From IMG/VR virus record IMGVR_UViG_3300042514_000542, positions 62,001 to 126,000 of that record: a stretch of 64,000 nt of DNA; one strand, 5' to 3'. How positions within the stretch are numbered: position 1 is the stretch's first letter; every line of letters begins with the position of its first letter. Made by a program: the position numbers and the translations under genes. The notes below the pieces were generated by a model that saw only the letters and a program-made list of their open reading frames with translations, searched no databases and was not told the origin of the DNA. This document shows positions 4,903 to 15,293 of this stretch, in pieces.

Positions 4903-5556
4903 TTAATAACCCCATGCTTTAAGGGTATGTTGGAATGGTTGTGATTCAATTCCTTTAACCAATTCAAGCATTTTGGTGGCGATATCATTGATTTCTTTTT
5001 GTGCGTGTTCGGATTTTCTAAGTTTTAGAAAGTTTGCAAAGCTTCTCATGTTAAAGGAAACGTCTCCTTGAATTTGCGAGTTATACGTCTTAAAGAATCG
5101 TGCTGATTCCTTTGCCCTCTTACGTCCAAGAATAGGCTCTAGGTCTTTGAGGCATTGATGATAGAGTCTATTAGATTCAATAGAAAAATCGTTCAATCTT
5201 TCAAGCCAAGTCATGTTTGGTGTCTCCCCATGAATATGGGAAATCTCTACATCCCAATCTTCTGGAAGATAATACTTATCCTCTTTAAGTTCTTTATACC
5301 TAGCAGACTCCGCATTCATGCTAGAGATACGATGCTTAAGTAAATGAATGTGACTGGCAATATCTGTATCTACTAGGAAGTGAACCATTCCTTTTTCGAA
5401 TGGTGTCTCATGCCCATTCTCCCATAACATCTTAATCAAATTGGGAACACGATTCTTCTTATCTTCGGTTAGTTCTCTTGAAGTGCTAGTCCATGCTGAA
5501 CATGCTATAACTTCGTCTGATCCATAGAATCCGATTAGTTCTACTTTATTATCCAT
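4903..5556 (-). CDS. thyX: flavin-dependent thymidylate synthase
   Basis: GHETPFE, HLLKHRISSMNAESARY, NMRSFANFLKLR..HAQKEI. Confidence 0.9.
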   Translation of the reverse strand: MDNKVELIGFYGSDEVIACSAWTSTSRELTEDKKNRVPNLIKMLWENGHETPFEKGMVHFLVDTDIASHIHLLKHRISSMNAESARYKELKEDKYYLPEDWDVEISHIHGETPNMTWLERLNDFSIESNRLYHQCLKDLEPILGRKRAKESARFFKTYNSQIQGDVSFNMRSFANFLKLRKSEHAQKEINDIATKMLELVKGIESQPFQHTLKAWGY

Positions 5557-6568: not shown

Positions 6569-6659
6569 AGTTGAATTATAGTTCGGTTTTAATTAAGCAG
6601 ATTACGTTTTCGGTCTATGTTGAATACAGAGTTTATTATTTGCTGAGTGTAATCTTATC

Positions 6660-6785
6660 AAATCACATTTTTTGCTACGTGTCCTAGCCATTAGACGATA
6701 CCATCTTATATAGAATGCGATGGCAGCAGGATTCGAACCTACATCACGATCTTAACAGGATATGCATTATTTGCTGTTGTGATTT
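6660..6785 (-). ncRNA. array unit carrying a circularly permuted tRNA-Asn(GTT)-like module
   Basis: Order: ATC-CTGTTAA-GATCG anticodon arm, TGAT, T arm GTAGG-TTCGAAT-CCTGC, acceptor 3' TGCCATC-G, linker, acceptor 5' GATGGTA, D arm GTCT-AATGGCTA-GGAC. Confidence 0.7.
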
Positions 6786-7059
6786 TATTCAAGAGTCTAT
6801 TTCACTTTGCGGCAGACACATTATAAGTCTTCCTAAGAAGATTGTTATCGTTCGTCCCGTATCTGTTACATATCTATTACTAGACTTAGTTCCACTATCT
6901 ACCATCGCCGTATCGGTTTCCCGACTCTAACTACCTTAGTGCCGTTATTCAGTTCTCTATATGCTGTTAGACTCTTTTTATCAGATTTATTATTGTGGCA
7001 TCGAATCCACTAATGCTTACGCATATTATCCTTGTTGGTTTGCTGTAATAAATCTTTTC

Positions 7060-7200
7060 AAAATGCCATTGTTGTTTGGACTCCAGCGTTTACCAATTCC
7101 GCCATACCTCACATTATTAATAACTGTGGAGGCAGTAGGACTTGAACCTACAAGATTTTCATCGGGAGTTTTGCTTCCTTTTATTTGCTGTTAGCATTTT
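7060..7200 (-). ncRNA. array unit carrying a circularly permuted tRNA-Leu-like module (long variable arm, no intact anticodon loop)
   Basis: ACTCC, variable arm GAT-GAAA-ATC, T arm GTAGG-TTCAAGT-CCTAC, TGCCTC, loop, GAGGTA, D arm GCG-GAATTGGTAAA-CGC, GGAGT. Confidence 0.7.
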
Positions 7201-7206
7201 TATTAC

Positions 7207-7296
7207 AAATTCTGGCTATTCCTAGCTTATTTCCCTTGTTTATGTAGAGCGGGAAATATAAGAGTCGAACTTATTAGTAAGATGCGGACAGAATTT
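7207..7296 (-). ncRNA. array unit: minimal permuted tRNA mimic
   Basis: T arm ATAAG-TTCGACT-CTTAT, acceptor ATTTCCC/GGGAAAT closed by a loop, short D hairpin GCTA-GGAA-TAGC, closing stem AAATTCTG/CAGAATTT. Confidence 0.65.
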
Positions 7297-7957
7297 TATC
7301 AGAACATGTTTTTGGGAAACCGTTCCCTATTAAGGCGGGAGTCGAACCCTAGCCCCACTTAGTTTTGGTAGTGATTTATTATTTGCTGTTAATGTTCTTA
7401 TTCAGAAAAAGTGAAGATTAACTCCTATCTTAAGCTCCATATCACAACCTCTGATATGGTGAGGATACCCGCACGACTTTCATCGTTTTGCATATTTGCT
7501 TTTATTTTTGTTTTAGTTGCTGATACTTTTTCTTATACGATTGACGGATATGGAATCGAACCATTTTAGTTCCCTCGGGCCACCGACAGGTTATTTGATA
7601 TAATAATTGTTTTAGTTGCTGAAGTCAATCTATCAGAGGACGTTTTTATTTCAATTAACGTTTGATTTTATATATTTGCTGAATGTCCTCTTGTTATGGG
7701 ATTTCCGATTCGTCACCCACTATTCAGCCTTTTATATCTTTCGACACCGCTTGACTGAATCACTTATTGATCGTCTTAAATTTCGGATTACGTTTATTTT
7801 CAATAACAATGAATTTGGTTATTTGCTGATTGTAATCCTATATCAGATCGCGTTTTTTATTTCCAATAATAAGTTAATATTTGCTGAATACGATCTTGTT
7901 GATAGTTTTTATTATTTCGAACCGTAGAACTACCAAACTACTGAGATTCTTTTATGT

Positions 7958-7998
7958 CCTCTACTCATGTATTTAAACATAGAGTAGAGGTTTGTCAA
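7958..7998 (-). promoter_or_regulatory. candidate promoter of the RNA array inside an inverted repeat
   Basis: TTGACA (7993-7998), 17 nt, then TAAATA (7970-7975). The TAAATA is flanked by the perfect IR CCTCTACTC/GAGTAGAGG (7958-7966, 7982-7990). Confidence 0.5.
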
Positions 7999-8007
7999 CC
8001 ACGACAA

Positions 8008-9666
8008 TTAGATTTCAACCATATTGAGGATTTCTTGGTCTAGGGCAATGTTGATAAGATCATAAGTAGTCTTAATCTTACCACTTAGGAAGCTTACAGC
8101 ACTGGCTGAATATCCGCCCATATAATATACGTTCTGAACATCTTTACCAGTCTCAAACTTCTCACCAGTTCCTCGACCATATGCATTACTTTGAAGGTTC
8201 CAGAGAACAATCACAAAGTTATCTACATAAGCCTTGGAGAATCCAGCATTACGAAGTGTGTCTAGTGCCGCTTCAACATTAGTTCTACCTAGTGATGCTG
8301 GATTAAACTCTGAATCGGACACTGCTAGAATTCCACTAGGAAAATCTGATTCAGGTGTTCCCTCTCTCTTCATCTTAGCGAAAAGATTAATAACACTTTG
8401 GAAGTTAGTTCCACCATAAAAAGAAGACTTATCATTCTTCCACTTATCGACAGGTGTTTGACCAACCCATTTCCTAAGTTTAGCATCGGAATTGAATTCA
8501 ATCCAATGACCTGCAAAGGTTCCTTGTAGGAATTCACTGAAATATAGTGCTAGAGCTTTACCGACATTATAACAACTTGATTTAGTTCCCGGACATTGTG
8601 AAGACATGCTGCCGCTTACGTCTCTTACCACGATAAGATCAGTAACTTCGTTATCTCTTGCCTTTTGGACAAGTGTATCGAATTGCTTATTGATAGTTGC
8701 TTCCTTGTTCTTAACACCCATCCAAGAACCTTCAAAGAGTTCATGAACAAATCCAGTATACTTAACGTCCTTGGTTTCGGGTGCAGTAATCCATGCGGAA
8801 TACTTGTCACTAAGACCATGATTCTTAAGGAACTTGGACTTAACAAGAATCGACAATGCACGACCATGAATCTTATCAAACTCAAGTTCATTGAACTTAG
8901 CCTTAGAGATTAGCTTTTGCCAATCATGTGCGGTTCCACTGTTCTTAAGCTTACGATATTGCTTATAGGTAGAAGGGGTTTCCTTTTGTCCAAAGATCAA
9001 TGAGCAGATCCACTTAGCGATTGCATTGTTGGATTGTGCATCAATGGTAGTAGCTTGGCTACGTGCTTTGATTTGTGGGAGATACTTCTTCACAAGATCA
9101 CAAGTATTCTTGTTATGAAGTCCTGCAAGAATCAATTGACCAAACTTATCCCAATCAAGCTTACGGTTATTCCAACCATTATAGCTAAGGTCATATTGAA
9201 GCATGGTGAATACATCGTGCCACGATCCAAGAGATACAAACAATAGGATGTTATTCCAGAATGCTTGTGGAGACTTGTCATGTAGCCAAATCATACGCAT
9301 AATTGCTTCATGCTTAAGTTCAGTTCCCTTTTGAGGGGATTCAGTCTTAGTTCCATCAGGAAGATTAACCGTGCGAGGAATGGTTCTCATAAACAAGGCA
9401 AACTTAGTAGCCTTAAGAGGATCTTCACCCCACAACATTTCACAATCTTGTGCGATTTCAGAATACTTACGAGGAACTTTATACTTACCTGCTTTGGTGA
9501 ACTGGTCAGTTAGGGAATCACCAGAACTTGAAAATTTCTTAGCACCGTTACCTGAACGGGTTACATTTGATTGAGCCTTTGCATTATTTAGGAATGCATT
9601 AACTTCTCCACGGGTGACAGCTTTCTTAGTAGCTACGACTTCTGGTTTGCGTTTGTTTTCGAACAT
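8008..9666 (-). CDS. Ro60/TROVE-related helical-repeat plus vWA protein (DUF2828-like)
   Basis: N-terminal helical region (DPLKATKFALFMRTIPR, GSWHDV, KKYLP); C-terminal vWA with MIDAS VVRDVSGSM, GGTNFQSV, AVSDSEFN, VLWNL, GYSAS. Confidence 0.8.
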   Translation of the reverse strand: MFENKRKPEVVATKKAVTRGEVNAFLNNAKAQSNVTRSGNGAKKFSSSGDSLTDQFTKAGKYKVPRKYSEIAQDCEMLWGEDPLKATKFALFMRTIPRTVNLPDGTKTESPQKGTELKHEAIMRMIWLHDKSPQAFWNNILLFVSLGSWHDVFTMLQYDLSYNGWNNRKLDWDKFGQLILAGLHNKNTCDLVKKYLPQIKARSQATTIDAQSNNAIAKWICSLIFGQKETPSTYKQYRKLKNSGTAHDWQKLISKAKFNELEFDKIHGRALSILVKSKFLKNHGLSDKYSAWITAPETKDVKYTGFVHELFEGSWMGVKNKEATINKQFDTLVQKARDNEVTDLIVVRDVSGSMSSQCPGTKSSCYNVGKALALYFSEFLQGTFAGHWIEFNSDAKLRKWVGQTPVDKWKNDKSSFYGGTNFQSVINLFAKMKREGTPESDFPSGILAVSDSEFNPASLGRTNVEAALDTLRNAGFSKAYVDNFVIVLWNLQSNAYGRGTGEKFETGKDVQNVYYMGGYSASAVSFLSGKIKTTYDLINIALDQEILNMVEI

Positions 9667-10630: not shown

Positions 10631-11401
10631 TCAAACATCCCACAGTCTAGCAAAGAATTCATCAAGTTCTTCTTTGGTTATCACGACCTTCTTACTAAAG
10701 ATATAATCATTGATATCATTATAGTTAGTTAAGTTGAAGTTTTCACCATTAACATAAGACCACCATGAACCATTCTTTTGTTGATCGGTGCATTCGGTAG
10801 CCCAATTATGTCCAATGTTGTGAAGCATTTCATGTTGATCGGCACGACCTTGACCATGTAGTTCTTTGGGTGAGAAGAATTGATTACAGAACATACTAAG
10901 ACTATTACGTTCCCAATCCTTTACTCTCCATAGGAAGACATTGGCAACATCATCTTTAGGACATTGGAATGCACGGGCATCAAAGATAGCAGGATTTGAA
11001 TCTGCAAAATCCCAAACGTTGAAGAATTGTTGATAATTTTTAATTACCCAATTCTTATTAAAGTATGCTGTCATCATTGCAGCAGTAACACTTTCAATCT
11101 TATTCTGTCTACCACCAAACCATTGTTGTGTTTCAATGGTATCACTATCATCCAATACAAATGTCACTTCATCACTTTGAGCATATAAGGCTTTACATCC
11201 TTGCATTTGTTTTGCTACCTCTTTAGCAGACTCAAACATACAAGTAATAAGTGTTTGATCGAAAGGTCTTTGACAACCCTTTGTGAACTGACTAAAGCAC
11301 TTGCCATCCACTCGTATAACTATAGGAATTTTAGGTAAGAAATAATTCTCACTTATAGATTCATATCGTTTTATTCTATCCCCCAAAGAGTCATTTTTCA
11401 T
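10631..11401 (-). CDS. tRNA(His) guanylyltransferase Thg1-like 3'-5' polymerase
   Basis: IVIRVDGKCFSQFT, YAQSDEVTF, FDARAF, WR..DW.RNS. Confidence 0.9.
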   Translation of the reverse strand: MKNDSLGDRIKRYESISENYFLPKIPIVIRVDGKCFSQFTKGCQRPFDQTLITCMFESAKEVAKQMQGCKALYAQSDEVTFVLDDSDTIETQQWFGGRQNKIESVTAAMMTAYFNKNWVIKNYQQFFNVWDFADSNPAIFDARAFQCPKDDVANVFLWRVKDWERNSLSMFCNQFFSPKELHGQGRADQHEMLHNIGHNWATECTDQQKNGSWWSYVNGENFNLTNYNDINDYIFSKKVVITKEELDEFFARLWDV

Positions 11402-12314
11402 AATTCCATTTATATCCTTTATGTGTTTGTCTTTTCCCTTTACAACAAGCTACGATAGCTGATGGATCAAATCCAGTCGATTTGATGCTATCCCATGTTT
11501 TAATATGGTTATCATTTAAATCCTTTTGTTCAACTCTTATCCTGTTGTTTACGGGTGTGAAATTTATATTATTATTCTTAAAGTAGTTTTTGATGCATTT
11601 TATAGGAACACCATATTTTTTGTAAAGCCTGTATATTGTATACTCTTCCGTTTTGAAATCTTTAACTATATCTAAATATTTTAAACTATGATCAATTGGT
11701 CCATCTTCATCAATTTTAGAATTTTTTAATTGTTTTATCTCCCACTTATGTTTGTATGATTCTACTGGACAGTCACCAATATAATTTAAAAAATGTTTAG
11801 CAAATATTCGTTTGATATATATTCTGTTATTGGTGAAGTTGATCCATGATTTCCATTCCTGTAATTGCCCATTTAGAAACTCTAAACTATCTTTATCGAA
11901 GGAATCTGTGCATAATTTAATATATCCATGACTCTTATCTAATGAACCATCACCAACATACCATAACAGAATTATAGTGTTTGTCAACTCTAAATCTTTC
12001 GGAACTATTTTAAGTCCTTCTGGATACCACACCATTCTAAGGTTGTAGAATGTTATGCTGCTCTTAGTTCTTATGCTATAATTTATATATGTCTTCTTTG
12101 TTCTCTTATCGTAAATTTCTCTTCTGATCGGACCATCTTTATATCTGGGAGATACCAAGTCTTTAAGTTGATTCCATACATACTCCACATGATCTAAATT
12201 ACTACTACCATACATGAAGCAAGAGCTTTTACCCTTTATAGATAAGCACCCATCACCTAATAAGCATCCTTGAATTACTTCTAATTCGTATTGTGTTAAA
12301 TTTATTACACTCAT
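11391..12314 (-). CDS. LAGLIDADG homing endonuclease with C-terminal NUMOD1-like tail
   Basis: IQGCLLGDGCL and WYVGDGS motifs; IVACCKGKRQTHKGYKW tail; start reassigned to ATG 12314, after ACTAAATAATAGT. Confidence 0.85.
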   Translation of the reverse strand: MSVINLTQYELEVIQGCLLGDGCLSIKGKSSCFMYGSSNLDHVEYVWNQLKDLVSPRYKDGPIRREIYDKRTKKTYINYSIRTKSSITFYNLRMVWYPEGLKIVPKDLELTNTIILLWYVGDGSLDKSHGYIKLCTDSFDKDSLEFLNGQLQEWKSWINFTNNRIYIKRIFAKHFLNYIGDCPVESYKHKWEIKQLKNSKIDEDGPIDHSLKYLDIVKDFKTEEYTIYRLYKKYGVPIKCIKNYFKNNNINFTPVNNRIRVEQKDLNDNHIKTWDSIKSTGFDPSAIVACCKGKRQTHKGYKWNYEK

Positions 12315-12425
12315 ACTATTATTTAGTGTAGAGTGTAACACTTTTCACATTTGGACATAAGAAAGTTCCAGATATAAGAACGGGTCTGGACTCCGCATGA
12401 AAAAGACTCTTACTGTCTATGTGAA

Positions 12426-13793: not shown

Positions 13794-15293
13794 TTAGAAG
13801 TGTTTTGCTACCCTCTCACGAATCTCTGCAAGCGTCCATTCTCGAATAATTTTCCCGTTGTTGAAGACTTCAACAAATTCACAATTAAGAACATCATCCC
13901 AAGTTGCCTGATCCTTTAGGTAAAATTCACCTTCAAGATCTTTATAGACTGCGAGCAATCCTTTAGCCGATTTCTTCATACCACTAGTATCAGTTTTAGG
14001 ATCTTTGTAAATTTCCACCAATTCTCCATTCTTAACACAAGCTGTAGCTTTACAAGCCCACCCATCAGTATCTCTTGTAACCATTTGATATGTAAAACTT
14101 CCGATACCCAAAACAAGATTAGTAGATGCGAAACCCTTAGCTTTAAGACCCTCGCAGATTCTTTCTGCTACCTCTAAAGTCACTCCATCACCAAGGATAG
14201 CACCAACCTTTTCGTGTAGGACTTTATAACCCTTATCATTAACAGTTCCCCCAAAAATATCCCATAGAAGTTCAACAGTTCCCAATCTTTCGGGACTACC
14301 TTCTGGAGCATCAGGATCACCAATGATAATTAGAACATTATCACCACTATCAGGTCTAAATACCGTTTTATTAACGAAGTGTCCTTCACGGGAAAGGATA
14401 GCCCTTTGCACATCTTCCTCTCTAAGAGTTACGTTTAGGAAAGACCAATAATCGTAGGTGTCAGAAACTAAGCTAACAATACCATAAGGTTGAACTTCAG
14501 TGATGATGTGAAGCATCATTTCCTTCTCGCTTTTATCTCCCCACGAAGAAACCACGCTATGCTCAGTTGCGCTCACACTACATCCGACTAATTCTTCATC
14601 CGAATTAGCATTGTAATACTCTTCGGCAAAGTCTACACCCCAAACAGTATCAGTTCCTACGAAGCTAGTTAAATGCCCCATATCTACTAATGCAGCAGCC
14701 TCGGTTCCCATACAACCACGGGCAGAAAAATTATGACCCTGAAAAGGAACAAATGTTTCGTCACCAGTTTCCTTAGCATATTTTTCAAGCAAGAGTCTAA
14801 ACTGATTTGCGGTAGTCGCAGAAGTAGATAAAGGCCAATAATTAGCACTAATAATAGTTTCAAGATAATTAGTTACCCAAAAGAAGTTTTCATCATTAGG
14901 TTTAGTATTCCAATATTGAAATGTCGGAACCTTATATGGAACCTTACTACCTTCAGGGAGAGCATATACTTGGATAGGTAGATACCCTAGATCATGTAAT
15001 GCTTCCATGTGCTTAGTTCCTACAACATTCTTCTCTCCCAAGTAGTTATTAACCCTTCTAGTAAAGCGTTTAATTACCTTTTCCTTTGGTTGATCAAAAA
15101 ATCCATTCCATTGGTTGATGAAAATCTCTTTAATAACATACTGCATACCTAGTGCAACTACATGTTTCGGAATGTTTTTTCGATAGGATTTTCTAGGAGT
15201 TCCATTACTCACTACTTGTTCGGTATCTGGGTGATAAGCGTTCTTATGGAACATTTTATACCCATCAATTTGTGTTTCAGCGTTGTTTTGCAT
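13794..15293 (-). CDS. nadV: nicotinamide phosphoribosyltransferase-like (Nampt/Namat family)
   Basis: IDGYKMFH, YLETI, HNFSARG, HLTSFVGTDT, ATEHSV, SLVSDTYD, RPDSGD, ILGDGVT, KDPKTD..KKSAKG. Confidence 0.9.
   Translation of the reverse strand: MQNNAETQIDGYKMFHKNAYHPDTEQVVSNGTPRKSYRKNIPKHVVALGMQYVIKEIFINQWNGFFDQPKEKVIKRFTRRVNNYLGEKNVVGTKHMEALHDLGYLPIQVYALPEGSKVPYKVPTFQYWNTKPNDENFFWVTNYLETIISANYWPLSTSATTANQFRLLLEKYAKETGDETFVPFQGHNFSARGCMGTEAAALVDMGHLTSFVGTDTVWGVDFAEEYYNANSDEELVGCSVSATEHSVVSSWGDKSEKEMMLHIITEVQPYGIVSLVSDTYDYWSFLNVTLREEDVQRAILSREGHFVNKTVFRPDSGDNVLIIIGDPDAPEGSPERLGTVELLWDIFGGTVNDKGYKVLHEKVGAILGDGVTLEVAERICEGLKAKGFASTNLVLGIGSFTYQMVTRDTDGWACKATACVKNGELVEIYKDPKTDTSGMKKSAKGLLAVYKDLEGEFYLKDQATWDDVLNCEFVEVFNNGKIIREWTLAEIRERVAKHF

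What the first reader, a model, noticed from the sequence alone, without database searches (positions are those of the whole stretch)
6983..7630. Payloads appear to derive from several different tRNAs at different stages of decay
Unit 7060-7200 aligns arm by arm with a type II tRNA-Leu in permuted order (T arm, acceptor 3', loop, acceptor 5', D arm). Unit 7207-7296 is a minimal permuted mimic. Unit 7404-7533 keeps a Leu-like variable arm (CGAT-GAAA-GTCG) and an 8-bp looped acceptor (CCATATCA/TGATATGG). Units 7301-7398, 7539-7630 and 6983-7055 keep only TTCGA T-loop hairpins. Inference: the array grew by repeated capture of tRNA pieces into a fixed handle, not by simple duplication. I saw no canonical tRNA gene in the window.
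Basis: partly seen in the sequence, partly recalled or inferred. Interest (0 to 1): 0.65.

Follow-up and report, generated by a model that had tools for sequence, protein, structure and literature searches.

The report
Phage array of tRNA-mimicking Y-like RNAs
A lake-water phage carries, just after a gene for a distant relative of the Ro60 RNA-binding ring protein, a row of about a dozen small RNA genes that share one fixed "handle" and display different pieces of tRNA; this is an undescribed, widespread variant of the Ro60/Y-RNA system.

Summary
It lies on the minus strand and is wider than reported: window 6599-7896, 12 handle units plus one odd element. Each unit has a 7-9 bp closing stem of variable sequence, an invariant CAGCAA motif, a payload, an A-rich stretch and the 3' stem half. 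Units are 3-6 nt apart. Units 7060-7200 and 6660-6785 fold as anticodon-less tRNAs in permuted order. When circularised they beat every shuffle, and relatives keep the fold through compensatory changes. Other units keep only a T arm, and the short ones carry anticodon-stem-loop-like hairpins.

The gene just upstream (8008-9666, Pfam DUF7788) has a Ro60 fold. The same handle sits beside its homologues, always on the same strand, in 40 of 48 metagenomic phage loci. It also occurs in a cultured cyanophage, a Salmonella Felixounavirus and Listeria phage P100plus.

Best reading: a polycistronic array of Y RNA-like, YrlA-style tRNA mimics that partner a divergent phage Ro60. It fails the YrlA membership tests (no GNCGAA motif, 15 bits against a 69-bit cut-off), so I call it a new variant.

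"Decay" is not supported, because the reduced payloads are conserved. Protein binding, RNA processing and function are all inferred.

The parts
8008..9666 (-). Gene for a 552-aa divergent Ro60-like protein (helical ring plus vWA domain with a DxSxS MIDAS motif)
   Evidence: Pfam DUF7788 at 1.4e-10; some homologues also carry DUF2828. PHROG 850 'RNA-binding protein'. AF2 model pLDDT 80.8. Top 12 Foldseek matches and top 10 VIA matches are all Ro60 chains, Z 12.3-16.1, 392-421 residues aligned. tblastn reaches mycobacteriophage 'Ro-like RNA binding protein' at 4e-12.
7970..7998 (-). Sigma-70-like promoter candidate, TTGACA-N17-TAAATA, right after the Ro-like stop codon
   Evidence: Exact match. 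The same motif sits at the same place in L001 and L002, and a close variant in L004. Alone it is not above chance, and the consensus scanner did not flag it.
7897..7969 (-). Leader between the promoter candidate and the first unit
   Evidence: No significant fold (z 0.38).
7845..7896 (-). Unit 1, short (52 nt): handle plus AU-rich payload
   Evidence: model R1 45.7 bits.
7785..7838 (-). Unit 2, short (54 nt): payload is a 4-bp hairpin with a 7-nt loop carrying GUU at the anticodon positions
   Evidence: R1 48.3 bits.
7692..7784 (-). Odd element without the CAGCAA handle; two hairpins
   Evidence: Fold z -2.05. Not matched by R1. Nature open.
7635..7691 (-). Unit 3, short (57 nt): hairpin with a 7-nt loop containing GUU
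   Evidence: R1 58.1 bits, the best in the genome. 97% payload identity to L048 unit 1.
7539..7630 (-). Unit 4: small conserved hairpin plus T arm (loop UUCGAUU); no acceptor or D arm
   Evidence: Orthologues in L001, L048 and the cultured cyanophage Lbo-JY46, with compensatory changes in both helices and completely different closing stems.
7404..7533 (-). Unit 5: three conserved hairpins (GAAA tetraloop hairpin, 8-bp hairpin with a 7-nt loop); no T loop
   Evidence: 89% payload identity to L001 unit 2. 10 of 31 predicted pairs are compensatory across 3 sequences. No tRNA score.
7301..7398 (-). Unit 6: hairpin, T-like arm (UUCGACU) and a 5-bp acceptor-like hairpin
   Evidence: Circular ARAGORN 88.6, above 300/300 shuffles. 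Orthologue in L048.
7207..7296 (-). Unit 7: minimal permuted tRNA mimic with a degenerate handle (CCGCAU)
   Evidence: T arm of 5 bp with loop UUCGACU, 6-bp acceptor-like hairpin, D-like hairpin with a GGAA loop. ARAGORN 86.9, above all shuffles.
7060..7200 (-). Unit 8: permuted, anticodon-less type II (Leu-like) tRNA body inside the handle
   Evidence: ARAGORN 101.9 when circularised, with the intron equal to the handle. RNAalifold on 5 orthologues gives the permuted cloverleaf de novo, 10 of 20 pairs compensatory.
6983..7055 (-). Unit 9: GNRA-type hairpin plus a T-like hairpin with an 8-nt loop
   Evidence: 87% payload identity to L003 unit 4; fold.
6791..6976 (-). Unit 10: long (186 nt) conserved structured payload of unknown type
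   Evidence: Orthologues in L001 and L048; 14 of 46 pairs compensatory. No Rfam match.
6660..6785 (-). Unit 11: permuted, anticodon-less tRNA body with a Glu-like D arm
   Evidence: ARAGORN 96.3, above 300/300 shuffles; 7-bp acceptor; intron equal to the handle. Best match is tRNA-Glu of the same phage. Weak YrlA hit of 15.4 bits.
6599..6655 (-). Unit 12, short (57 nt): 5-bp hairpin with a 7-nt loop
   Evidence: R1 47.7 bits; fold.
10631..11401 (-). Context: Thg1-like tRNA 5'-end repair polymerase, about 1 kb upstream of the Ro-like gene
   Evidence: Pfam Thg1 2.8e-30; PHROG 4717 1e-71.

Best explanation
The region is a polycistronic array of Y RNA-like noncoding RNAs that partner the phage's own divergent Ro60 protein, encoded directly upstream.

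Proposed course of events:
1. Transcription (inferred) starts at a promoter-like site just after the Ro-like gene and runs through 12-13 head-to-tail units.
2. Each unit folds on its own (shown by covariation). Its ends pair in a short stem of free sequence. Next to the stem is an internal loop with the invariant CAGCAA on the 5' side and an A-rich run on the 3' side. Beyond that loop sits a payload.
3. By analogy with Ro60 and Y RNA, the stem plus loop is the binding site for the Ro-like ring (inferred). The payload is the exposed effector module.

The payloads imitate parts of tRNA. Some are the elbow and acceptor without an anticodon, arranged as in bacterial YrlA. Some are a T arm only. 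The short units carry anticodon-stem-loop-like hairpins.

The likeliest role is to bring tRNA-recognising host or phage proteins to the Ro-like protein, or to hold them away from real tRNAs, as part of tRNA protection, repair or counter-defence during infection. This role is an inference. Protein binding, processing into single units and the targets are all untested.
For: Architecture and specificity:
- 153 units from 25 loci share the handle. 134 have the exact CAGCAA motif, and the gap between units is almost always 4 nt.
- The closing stem is 96.6% paired, and all 7 pairs change on both sides.
- A covariance model of the short units hits only the array in the whole 206.6-kb genome.

Link to the protein:
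- The upstream protein has a Ro60 fold and sequence similarity to annotated phage Ro-like proteins.
- All 92 model hits in 48 homologue-bearing loci lie on the gene's strand, in 40 of the 48 loci.
- The handle also occurs next to homologues in Leptolyngbya phage Lbo-JY46, Salmonella Felixounavirus BPS17L1 and Listeria phage P100plus.

tRNA mimicry:
- Circularised units score up to 111 in ARAGORN. 20 of 77 long units score at least 100. Real tRNAs of this phage score 102-124, and the shuffle maximum is 98.6.
- A permuted cloverleaf is predicted de novo, with 10 of 20 pairs compensatory.
- 22 of 69 short units have a 7-nt loop of anticodon-loop form, against 1.5 +/- 1.1 in shuffles.

Precedent:
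- YrlA RNAs are tRNA-like Y RNAs encoded within 4 kb of Ro60 on the same strand, including in 22 phages (PMC4201824).
- Thermus phage phiLo Ro60 binds two adjacent Y-like RNAs (PMC12135203).
- The Felixounavirus Bas63 homologue gp130 is Ro60-like and counters the Ppl defence system; its Y RNAs were only guessed at (bioRxiv 10.1101/2024.10.10.617714).

Context: the phage also encodes a Thg1-like enzyme, two RNA-ligase-family proteins and a CCA-adding-type enzyme.
Against: - There is no RNA or binding evidence. No RNA run holds the stretch.
- The YrlA signature GNCGAAN0-1G is absent from all 153 handles, and the Rfam YrlA model gives only 15.4 bits against a 69-bit cut-off.
- Pfam does not call a TROVE domain in the protein.
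- Units for the stem statistics were selected by their pairing, so the 'percent paired' figure is partly circular. The orthologue comparisons are not.
- Eight of 48 loci show no handle hit. In some loci the hits lie upstream of the gene or dispersed, not directly downstream.
- The shuffle tests treat related sequences as independent.
Confidence: 0.68

Rival explanations
1. Protein-independent decoys. The units are tRNA-part sponges for host tRNA-cleaving or tRNA-modifying defence enzymes. The handle is only a stabilising or processing cassette (clamp stem plus nuclease site), and its place next to the Ro-like gene reflects shared timing rather than binding.
For: Anticodon-loop-like hairpins are strongly enriched, and UUU, UGU and GUU are the commonest triplets. 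The regular 4-nt linkers look like processing sites. The phage invests heavily in tRNA supply and repair.
Against: The handle keeps an invariant single-stranded motif across phages whose Ro-like proteins are only about 25% identical to this one. It travels with that gene on the same strand in 92 of 92 hits. That pattern fits a specific protein partner better than a generic clamp. Decoy action and Ro binding are also not mutually exclusive.
Confidence: 0.15
2. Permuted or split tRNA genes. The units would be matured into working tRNAs by circularisation or ligation, as in the red alga Cyanidioschyzon merolae.
For: The 3' half precedes the 5' half, and the two acceptor strands pair across a short loop. 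The phage encodes RNA-ligase-family enzymes.
Against: No unit in the window has an anticodon loop; the handle occupies that place. Half of the units carry no tRNA body at all. The acceptor is closed by a loop without a free CCA end. The genome already has 23 ordinary tRNA genes.
Confidence: 0.03
3. An eroding array of tRNA pseudogenes: duplicated or captured tRNA fragments that are drifting toward loss.
For: Payloads range from near-complete tRNA bodies to lone T arms. Unit content and order differ between relatives. One metagenome contig appears to lack units 6 and 7 exactly, though the evidence is weak.
Against: The reduced payloads are conserved as orthologues down to a cyanophage whose Ro-like protein is 44% identical, and they show compensatory pair changes. 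The handle motif is invariant. The array is retained across very distant phage groups.
Confidence: 0.04
4. A guide-RNA or antitoxin-type repeat array, either CRISPR-like or like the RNA repeats of type III toxin-antitoxin systems.
For: Tandem units with a constant part and a variable part. There is one chance-level Rfam hit to a CRISPR repeat, on the opposite strand (E 1.8).
Against: No Cas or toxin gene is adjacent. The constant part is a stem of variable sequence plus a 6-nt motif, not a repeat. The payloads are structured and conserved between phages, not spacer-like.
Confidence: 0.02

Closest known systems
Bacterial and phage YrlA Y RNAs with Rsr/Ro60 (Rfam RF02553; Chen et al. 2014, PMC4201824)
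   Same: The RNAs are encoded next to a Ro60-type gene on the same strand. Their ends pair in a stem. The internal module imitates tRNA, with a T arm, a D arm and an acceptor closed by a loop, and without an anticodon.
   Different: The handle motif is CAGCAA rather than GNCGAA. The Rfam model scores far below its cut-off. There are a dozen units in one tight array rather than one to four. Many payloads are not the YrlA type: anticodon-loop-like hairpins, a lone T arm, a long unknown fold. The protein belongs to the DUF2828/DUF7788 branch, which Pfam does not call TROVE.
Thermus phage phiLo Ro60 with Yrl1 and Yrl2 (PMC12135203; PDB 9KOP, 9L5Y)
   Same: It is the best structural match of the window's protein (Z 16.1). 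It is a phage Ro60 with adjacent Y-like RNAs.
   Different: There are two RNAs, upstream of the gene, with the CGAA motif and no described tRNA mimicry. Sequence identity to the window's protein is 14%.
Felixounavirus Bas63 gp130 (bioRxiv 10.1101/2024.10.10.617714)
   Same: By genus it should match the Felixounavirus proteins hit at about 25% identity over 94% of the query (Bas63 itself was not examined here). It was noted as Ro60-like, sits upstream of the tRNA cluster, and was shown to counter the Ppl defence system.
   Different: Its RNA partners were not identified; the authors suggested that some annotated tRNAs might be Y RNAs. In the related phage BPS17L1, handle units lie between the tRNA genes.
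Dictyostelium Class I RNAs (Rfam RF01414; PMC7919456)
   Same: They are 42-65 nt long, with a short end-to-end stem of free sequence and a conserved motif ending in CAGCAA directly after the 5' stem half, followed by a variable region. This is the best-scoring Rfam family for six units (up to 30.9 bits, E 0.0025 in a 2-kb search).
   Different: The scores are below the 41.5-bit cut-off. Class I RNAs are eukaryotic genes with their own promoter element and are reported as unique to dictyostelids. Their known direct binder is an RRM protein. Homology is untested.
Permuted tRNA genes of Cyanidioschyzon merolae (from my own knowledge)
   Same: The 3' half lies upstream of the 5' half.
   Different: Those genes keep an anticodon loop and yield working tRNAs through a circular intermediate. 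The units here have none.

Membership tests
YrlA (tRNA-like Y RNA) | Encoded within 4 kb of a Ro60 orthologue, on the same strand | tested here: met
   The first unit starts 111 nt after the stop codon of the Ro-like gene, on the same strand. 92 of 92 hits in related loci are co-oriented with the gene.
YrlA (tRNA-like Y RNA) | The neighbouring protein is a Ro60/TROVE protein | tested here: inconclusive
   Pfam TROVE is not detected even at E 10. The fold, however, matches only Ro60 chains over ring plus vWA (Z 12.3-16.1), and tblastn links the protein to annotated phage Ro-like proteins.
YrlA (tRNA-like Y RNA) | GNCGAAN0-1G motif near the 5' end | tested here: not met
   0 of 153 units carry it in the handle region; 134 of 153 carry CAGCAA there instead.
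YrlA (tRNA-like Y RNA) | Internal domain with T arm, D arm and loop-closed acceptor | tested here: met
   Met for units 7060-7200 and 6660-6785, and in reduced form for 7207-7296. Not met for the other nine handle units.
YrlA (tRNA-like Y RNA) | Rfam RF02553 score at or above the gathering cut-off (69 bits) | tested here: not met
   The best score is 15.4 bits, E 9.7, at 6655-6774. Nothing reaches the gathering cut-off.
YrlA (tRNA-like Y RNA) | Bound by the Ro60 orthologue in vivo | not testable with these tools
   Needs immunoprecipitation or a gel-shift assay.
Dictyostelium Class I RNA (RF01414) | Short stem joining the ends, 11-nt motif next to the 5' stem half, and a score at or above 41.5 bits | tested here: not met
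   The stem and the CAGCAA part of the motif are present. The scores, 18-31 bits, are below the cut-off in the window, and no unit in 15 related loci passes.
Canonical tRNA | Detected as a linear cloverleaf with an anticodon loop | tested here: not met
   ARAGORN finds 0 genes and Rfam tRNA scores at most 19.6 bits in the window. Detection succeeds only after circular permutation, with the handle treated as an intron.
Permuted tRNA genes (C. merolae type) | Permuted halves that still contain an anticodon loop and mature to a working tRNA | tested here: not met
   The order is permuted, but the anticodon loop is replaced by the handle. Maturation cannot be tested here.

The most novel reading that the evidence does not exclude
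The stem-plus-CAGCAA handle is the signature of a separate, old RNP class in which DUF2828/DUF7788-type Ro paralogues bind 'display' RNAs. On this reading, the Class I RNAs of Dictyostelium, so far thought unique to social amoebae and of unknown mechanism, would be the eukaryotic members of the same class. The phage arrays would be programmable racks that present chosen tRNA parts (elbows, acceptor stems, anticodon loops of Lys/Thr/Asn type) to defeat tRNA-directed host defences.
Probability: 0.12. Interest if true: 0.92.

Novelty: new variant of a known kind. Interest (0 to 1): 0.77.

Why it matters
Ro60 and Y RNAs are conserved from bacteria to humans, yet their function in microbes is poorly understood and only a handful of Y RNAs per genome are known. 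This locus adds four things.

- **A new RNA class.** A large branch of phage Ro60-like proteins, annotated as hypothetical, DUF2828 or 'RNA-binding protein', has its own partner-RNA candidate that is absent from Rfam.
- **Tractable systems.** The class occurs in cultured, heavily used phages: Felixounaviruses of Salmonella (the Ro-like gene is also in E. coli members), Listeria phage P100plus and a Leptolyngbya cyanophage. The prediction can therefore be tested at the bench at once.
- **A link to counter-defence.** It supplies the missing RNA candidates for Bas63 gp130, a Ro60-like protein already shown to counter a defence system.
- **A modular design.** One handle carries many different tRNA-part payloads in a single transcript. 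This points to a general way for phages to imitate, or interfere with, tRNA recognition.

The resemblance to Dictyostelium Class I RNAs offers a concrete, testable lead on those RNAs.

Tried and rejected
- **blastn against phage records.** The array gave no match.
- **Rfam at gathering thresholds.** Nothing was found in the window.
- **Unit 10 as a 5S rRNA mimic.** I thought by eye that the payload resembled the 3' part of 5S rRNA. Rfam gives no 5S match even when the 186 nt are searched alone, so I dropped the idea. I had no trusted 5S sequence for a direct alignment.
- **Assigning payloads to source tRNAs.** Whole-body alignment puts Leu and Glu on top for units 8 and 11. The scores (53, 57) lie inside the range seen between different isotypes (44-70), so no capture event can be claimed.
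- **Unit 5 as a tRNA derivative.** No support.
- **RNA evidence.** No RNA run holds the stretch; only lake-water DNA metagenomes do. The contigs laid on the array are short. One contig with only a 21-nt flank suggests a variant lacking exactly units 6 and 7, which is too weak to rely on.
- **Promoter and terminator.** The consensus scanner did not flag the conserved TTGACA-N17-TAAATA site, and that motif alone is at chance level in the window. It also did not flag the terminator-like hairpin I read after the L004 array.
- **RtcB.** Absent from this genome.
- **Dictyostelium protein link.** I could not test whether Dictyostelium has a DUF2828 protein, or whether the unknown Class I-associated protein DDB_G0281243 is one. 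No tool here holds eukaryotic genomes or named proteins, and the literature search found nothing.
- **Small plus-strand ORFs across the array** (71-103 aa). I take these as mechanical, because the sequence varies by paired compensatory changes.
- **Complex prediction.** Not used, since it does not handle RNA partners.
Full report
**1. What is in the sequence**

The feature reads on the minus strand. I delimited units by the stem that pairs their two ends.

- **Unit layout.** Each unit has a 7-9 bp closing stem whose sequence differs from unit to unit, then one to three nucleotides, the motif CAGCAA(A/C)U, a payload of 25-160 nt, an A-rich run (often AAAAC) and the 3' half of the stem. Units are 3-6 nt apart.
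- **Exceptions.** One 93-nt element (7692-7784) lacks the handle. Unit 7207-7296 has a degenerate motif.
- **Known-family scans.** ARAGORN finds no tRNA and Rfam finds no family at curated thresholds in the 64 kb.
- **Flanks.** A TTGACA-N17-TAAATA site lies right after the upstream gene and recurs at the same place in relatives. In locus L004 the array ends in a hairpin followed by a run of T, read directly from the sequence.

**2. The tRNA likeness is real for some units**

Each unit was circularised and ARAGORN was allowed an intron in the anticodon loop.

| Unit | Score | Shuffles scoring at least as high (of 300) |
|---|---|---|
| 7060-7200 | 101.9 | 0 (maximum 98.6) |
| 6660-6785 | 96.3 | 0 |
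| 7301-7398 | 88.6 | 0 |
| 7207-7296 | 86.9 | 0 |
| 7539-7630 | 84.3 | 5 |
| 7404-7533, 6983-7055, 6791-6976 | no hit | - |

- For the two best units the "intron" is exactly the handle.
- The 23 genuine tRNAs of the same phage score 102-124.
- In related phages, 20 of 77 long units score at least 100 and 12 score at least 105.
- RNAalifold, given five orthologues of unit 7060-7200 and no hint, returns the permuted cloverleaf: anticodon-stem halves at the two ends, then the T arm, the acceptor hairpin and the D arm. Ten of its 20 pairs are kept through changes on both sides.
- T-arm hairpins with a TTCRANN loop occur 4 times in the 1.3-kb array, against 9 in the rest of the window on both strands. 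46 of the 77 long units in relatives have one.

**3. The short units are not empty**

- Among 69 short units from the related arrays, 49 contain a hairpin of at least 4 bp with a 7-nt loop. Shuffles give 19.3 +/- 3.4.
- 22 of them have a loop of the form (C/U/A)U-NNN-AA, as in anticodon loops. Shuffles give 1.5 +/- 1.1, with a maximum of 5.
- The middle triplets are mostly UUU, UGU, GUU, UCU, CUU and GAU.
- Window units 2 and 3 carry GUU in such loops.
- The sequences are related to one another, so the shuffle figures overstate independence.
- A few units in other phages hold a tRNA in normal order, one of them complete with a CCA end.
- The payload repertoire is therefore tRNA bodies, tRNA arms, anticodon-loop mimics, and some folds of unknown kind (units 7404-7533 and 6791-6976).

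**4. The neighbouring gene**

The ORF at 8008-9666 ends 111 nt before the first unit.

- Pfam sees only DUF7788. Some of its more than 1,500 homologues also carry DUF2828.
- An AlphaFold model (pLDDT 80.8) matches Ro60 chains and nothing else over its full length. The matches are Thermus phage phiLo Ro60, Deinococcus Rsr, and human and Xenopus Ro60. Z is 12.3-16.1 over 392-421 residues. The next tier (Z 9 or less) matches only the vWA domain.
- tblastn connects the protein at E 4e-12 to mycobacteriophage proteins annotated "Ro-like RNA binding protein". It also finds homologues in 510 phage records, among them Felixounaviruses, Listeria and Enterococcus phages. The closest is Leptolyngbya phage Lbo-JY46, at 44% identity.

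**5. The handle travels with the gene**

- A covariance model built from 56 short units hits only the array in the complete 206.6-kb genome. The next hit has E 0.7.
- In 48 loci fetched through the protein, it gives 92 hits at E 0.001 or better, in 40 loci, all on the strand of the gene.
- Many of those loci supplied training sequences. About twenty did not, and neither did the three cultured phages below.
- In Lbo-JY46, five unannotated units follow the gene directly.
- In Salmonella phage BPS17L1, four units lie among the tRNA genes downstream of the gene. One of them has a permuted tRNA-like payload.
- In Listeria phage P100plus, units lie just upstream of the gene, and an RtcB-type ligase lies 1.3 kb downstream.

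**6. Selection, not decay**

- Units have orthologues in close relatives at 68-97% payload identity, while their order and number differ.
- Orthologues recognised by their payload have entirely different closing stems that still pair.
- Internal helices show compensatory changes.
- On the 56 short units the closing stem is 96.6% paired and all seven pairs change on both sides. The caveat is that units were picked by their pairing.

**7. Comparison with known systems**

- **YrlA.** The arrangement is that of Ro60 with Y RNAs, and the tRNA-like units are built like YrlA (PMC4201824). Membership of YrlA nevertheless fails. The GNCGAA motif is absent from all 153 handles, and the Rfam model gives 15.4 bits against a cut-off of 69.
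- **Literature.** I found no description of this handle or of such arrays. The nearest statement is that Bas63 gp130 looks like Ro60, counters the Ppl defence system, and may use some "tRNA genes" as Y RNAs.
- **Dictyostelium Class I RNAs.** The best Rfam family for the short units is, unexpectedly, the Dictyostelium Class I RNA: the same size and end-to-end stem, and a motif ending in CAGCAA right after the 5' stem half. Scores reach 30.9 bits, below the 41.5-bit cut-off. Whether this is convergence or common descent could not be tested here.

**8. Mechanism and confidence**

- **Shown:** the array, its conserved modular fold, the tRNA mimicry of some payloads, the Ro60 fold of the neighbouring protein, and the gene-RNA association across phages.
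- **Inferred:** transcription as one precursor, cutting at the 4-nt linkers, binding of the ring protein to the stem and CAGCAA loop, and use of the payloads to recruit or titrate tRNA-recognising proteins.
- **Context:** the phage also encodes a Thg1-like enzyme, two RNA-ligase-family proteins, a CCA-adding-type enzyme and 23 tRNAs. This fits a role in keeping translation running under tRNA-directed attack.
- **Confidence:** about 0.68 that these are partner RNAs of the Ro-like protein, and clearly less for any particular downstream role.

Noticed in passing
window 6575-6596 (minus strand); also L001 about 8683-8700 and L002 about 8106-8127: A conserved AT-rich motif ending in TATAAT (TTAATTAAAACCGAACTATAAT) sits just before the ORF that follows the array. 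It recurs before other genes in relatives. Metagenome contigs pile up on it at high depth, as expected for a repeated phage promoter.
   Followed up: partly
own genome G000:C1:23941-24013 (outside the window): One of the phage's 23 tRNAs has the anticodon CUA, making it an amber suppressor type. This could mean TAG is read through or recoded in part of the genome.
   Followed up: no
window 6791-6976 (minus strand): Unit 10 carries a 160-nt payload with long invariant single-stranded stretches and 14 compensatory pairs among three phages. It matches no Rfam family. A 5S-rRNA-like stretch seen by eye was not supported.
   Followed up: partly
window 7634-7895 and 6598-6654 (minus strand): Rfam's Dictyostelium Class I RNA model aligns end to end with six units (18-31 bits, below the cut-off). 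It shares the end-to-end stem and the CAGCAA motif.
   Followed up: partly
L011 5831-5965: One unit in a related phage encloses a complete tRNA-like sequence in normal order, with a CCA end and an 8-nt anticodon loop (ARAGORN reads a four-base anticodon).
   Followed up: partly
L061 4222-5040 (Salmonella phage BPS17L1): In this Felixounavirus, handle units with nearly identical closing stems are interspersed with ordinary tRNA genes downstream of the Ro-like gene. None is annotated in the record.
   Followed up: partly
window 11391-12341 (minus strand): A LAGLIDADG homing-endonuclease ORF overlaps the end of the Thg1-like gene by 11 nt, which suggests a mobile insertion beside the tRNA-repair gene.
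   Followed up: no
window 7206-7401: One contig from another lake metagenome joins 7205 to 7402, which would remove exactly units 6 and 7. Only 21 nt lie on one side of the joint, so this is weak.
   Followed up: partly
window 7692-7784 (minus strand): A 93-nt element inside the array lacks the handle but folds into two hairpins (z -2.05). It could be a diverged unit or a different RNA.
   Followed up: partly
window 13794-15293 and 4903-5556 (minus strand): Genes for a nicotinate/nicotinamide phosphoribosyltransferase-family enzyme and for ThyX flank the region. These are auxiliary metabolic genes typical of large phages.
   Followed up: no
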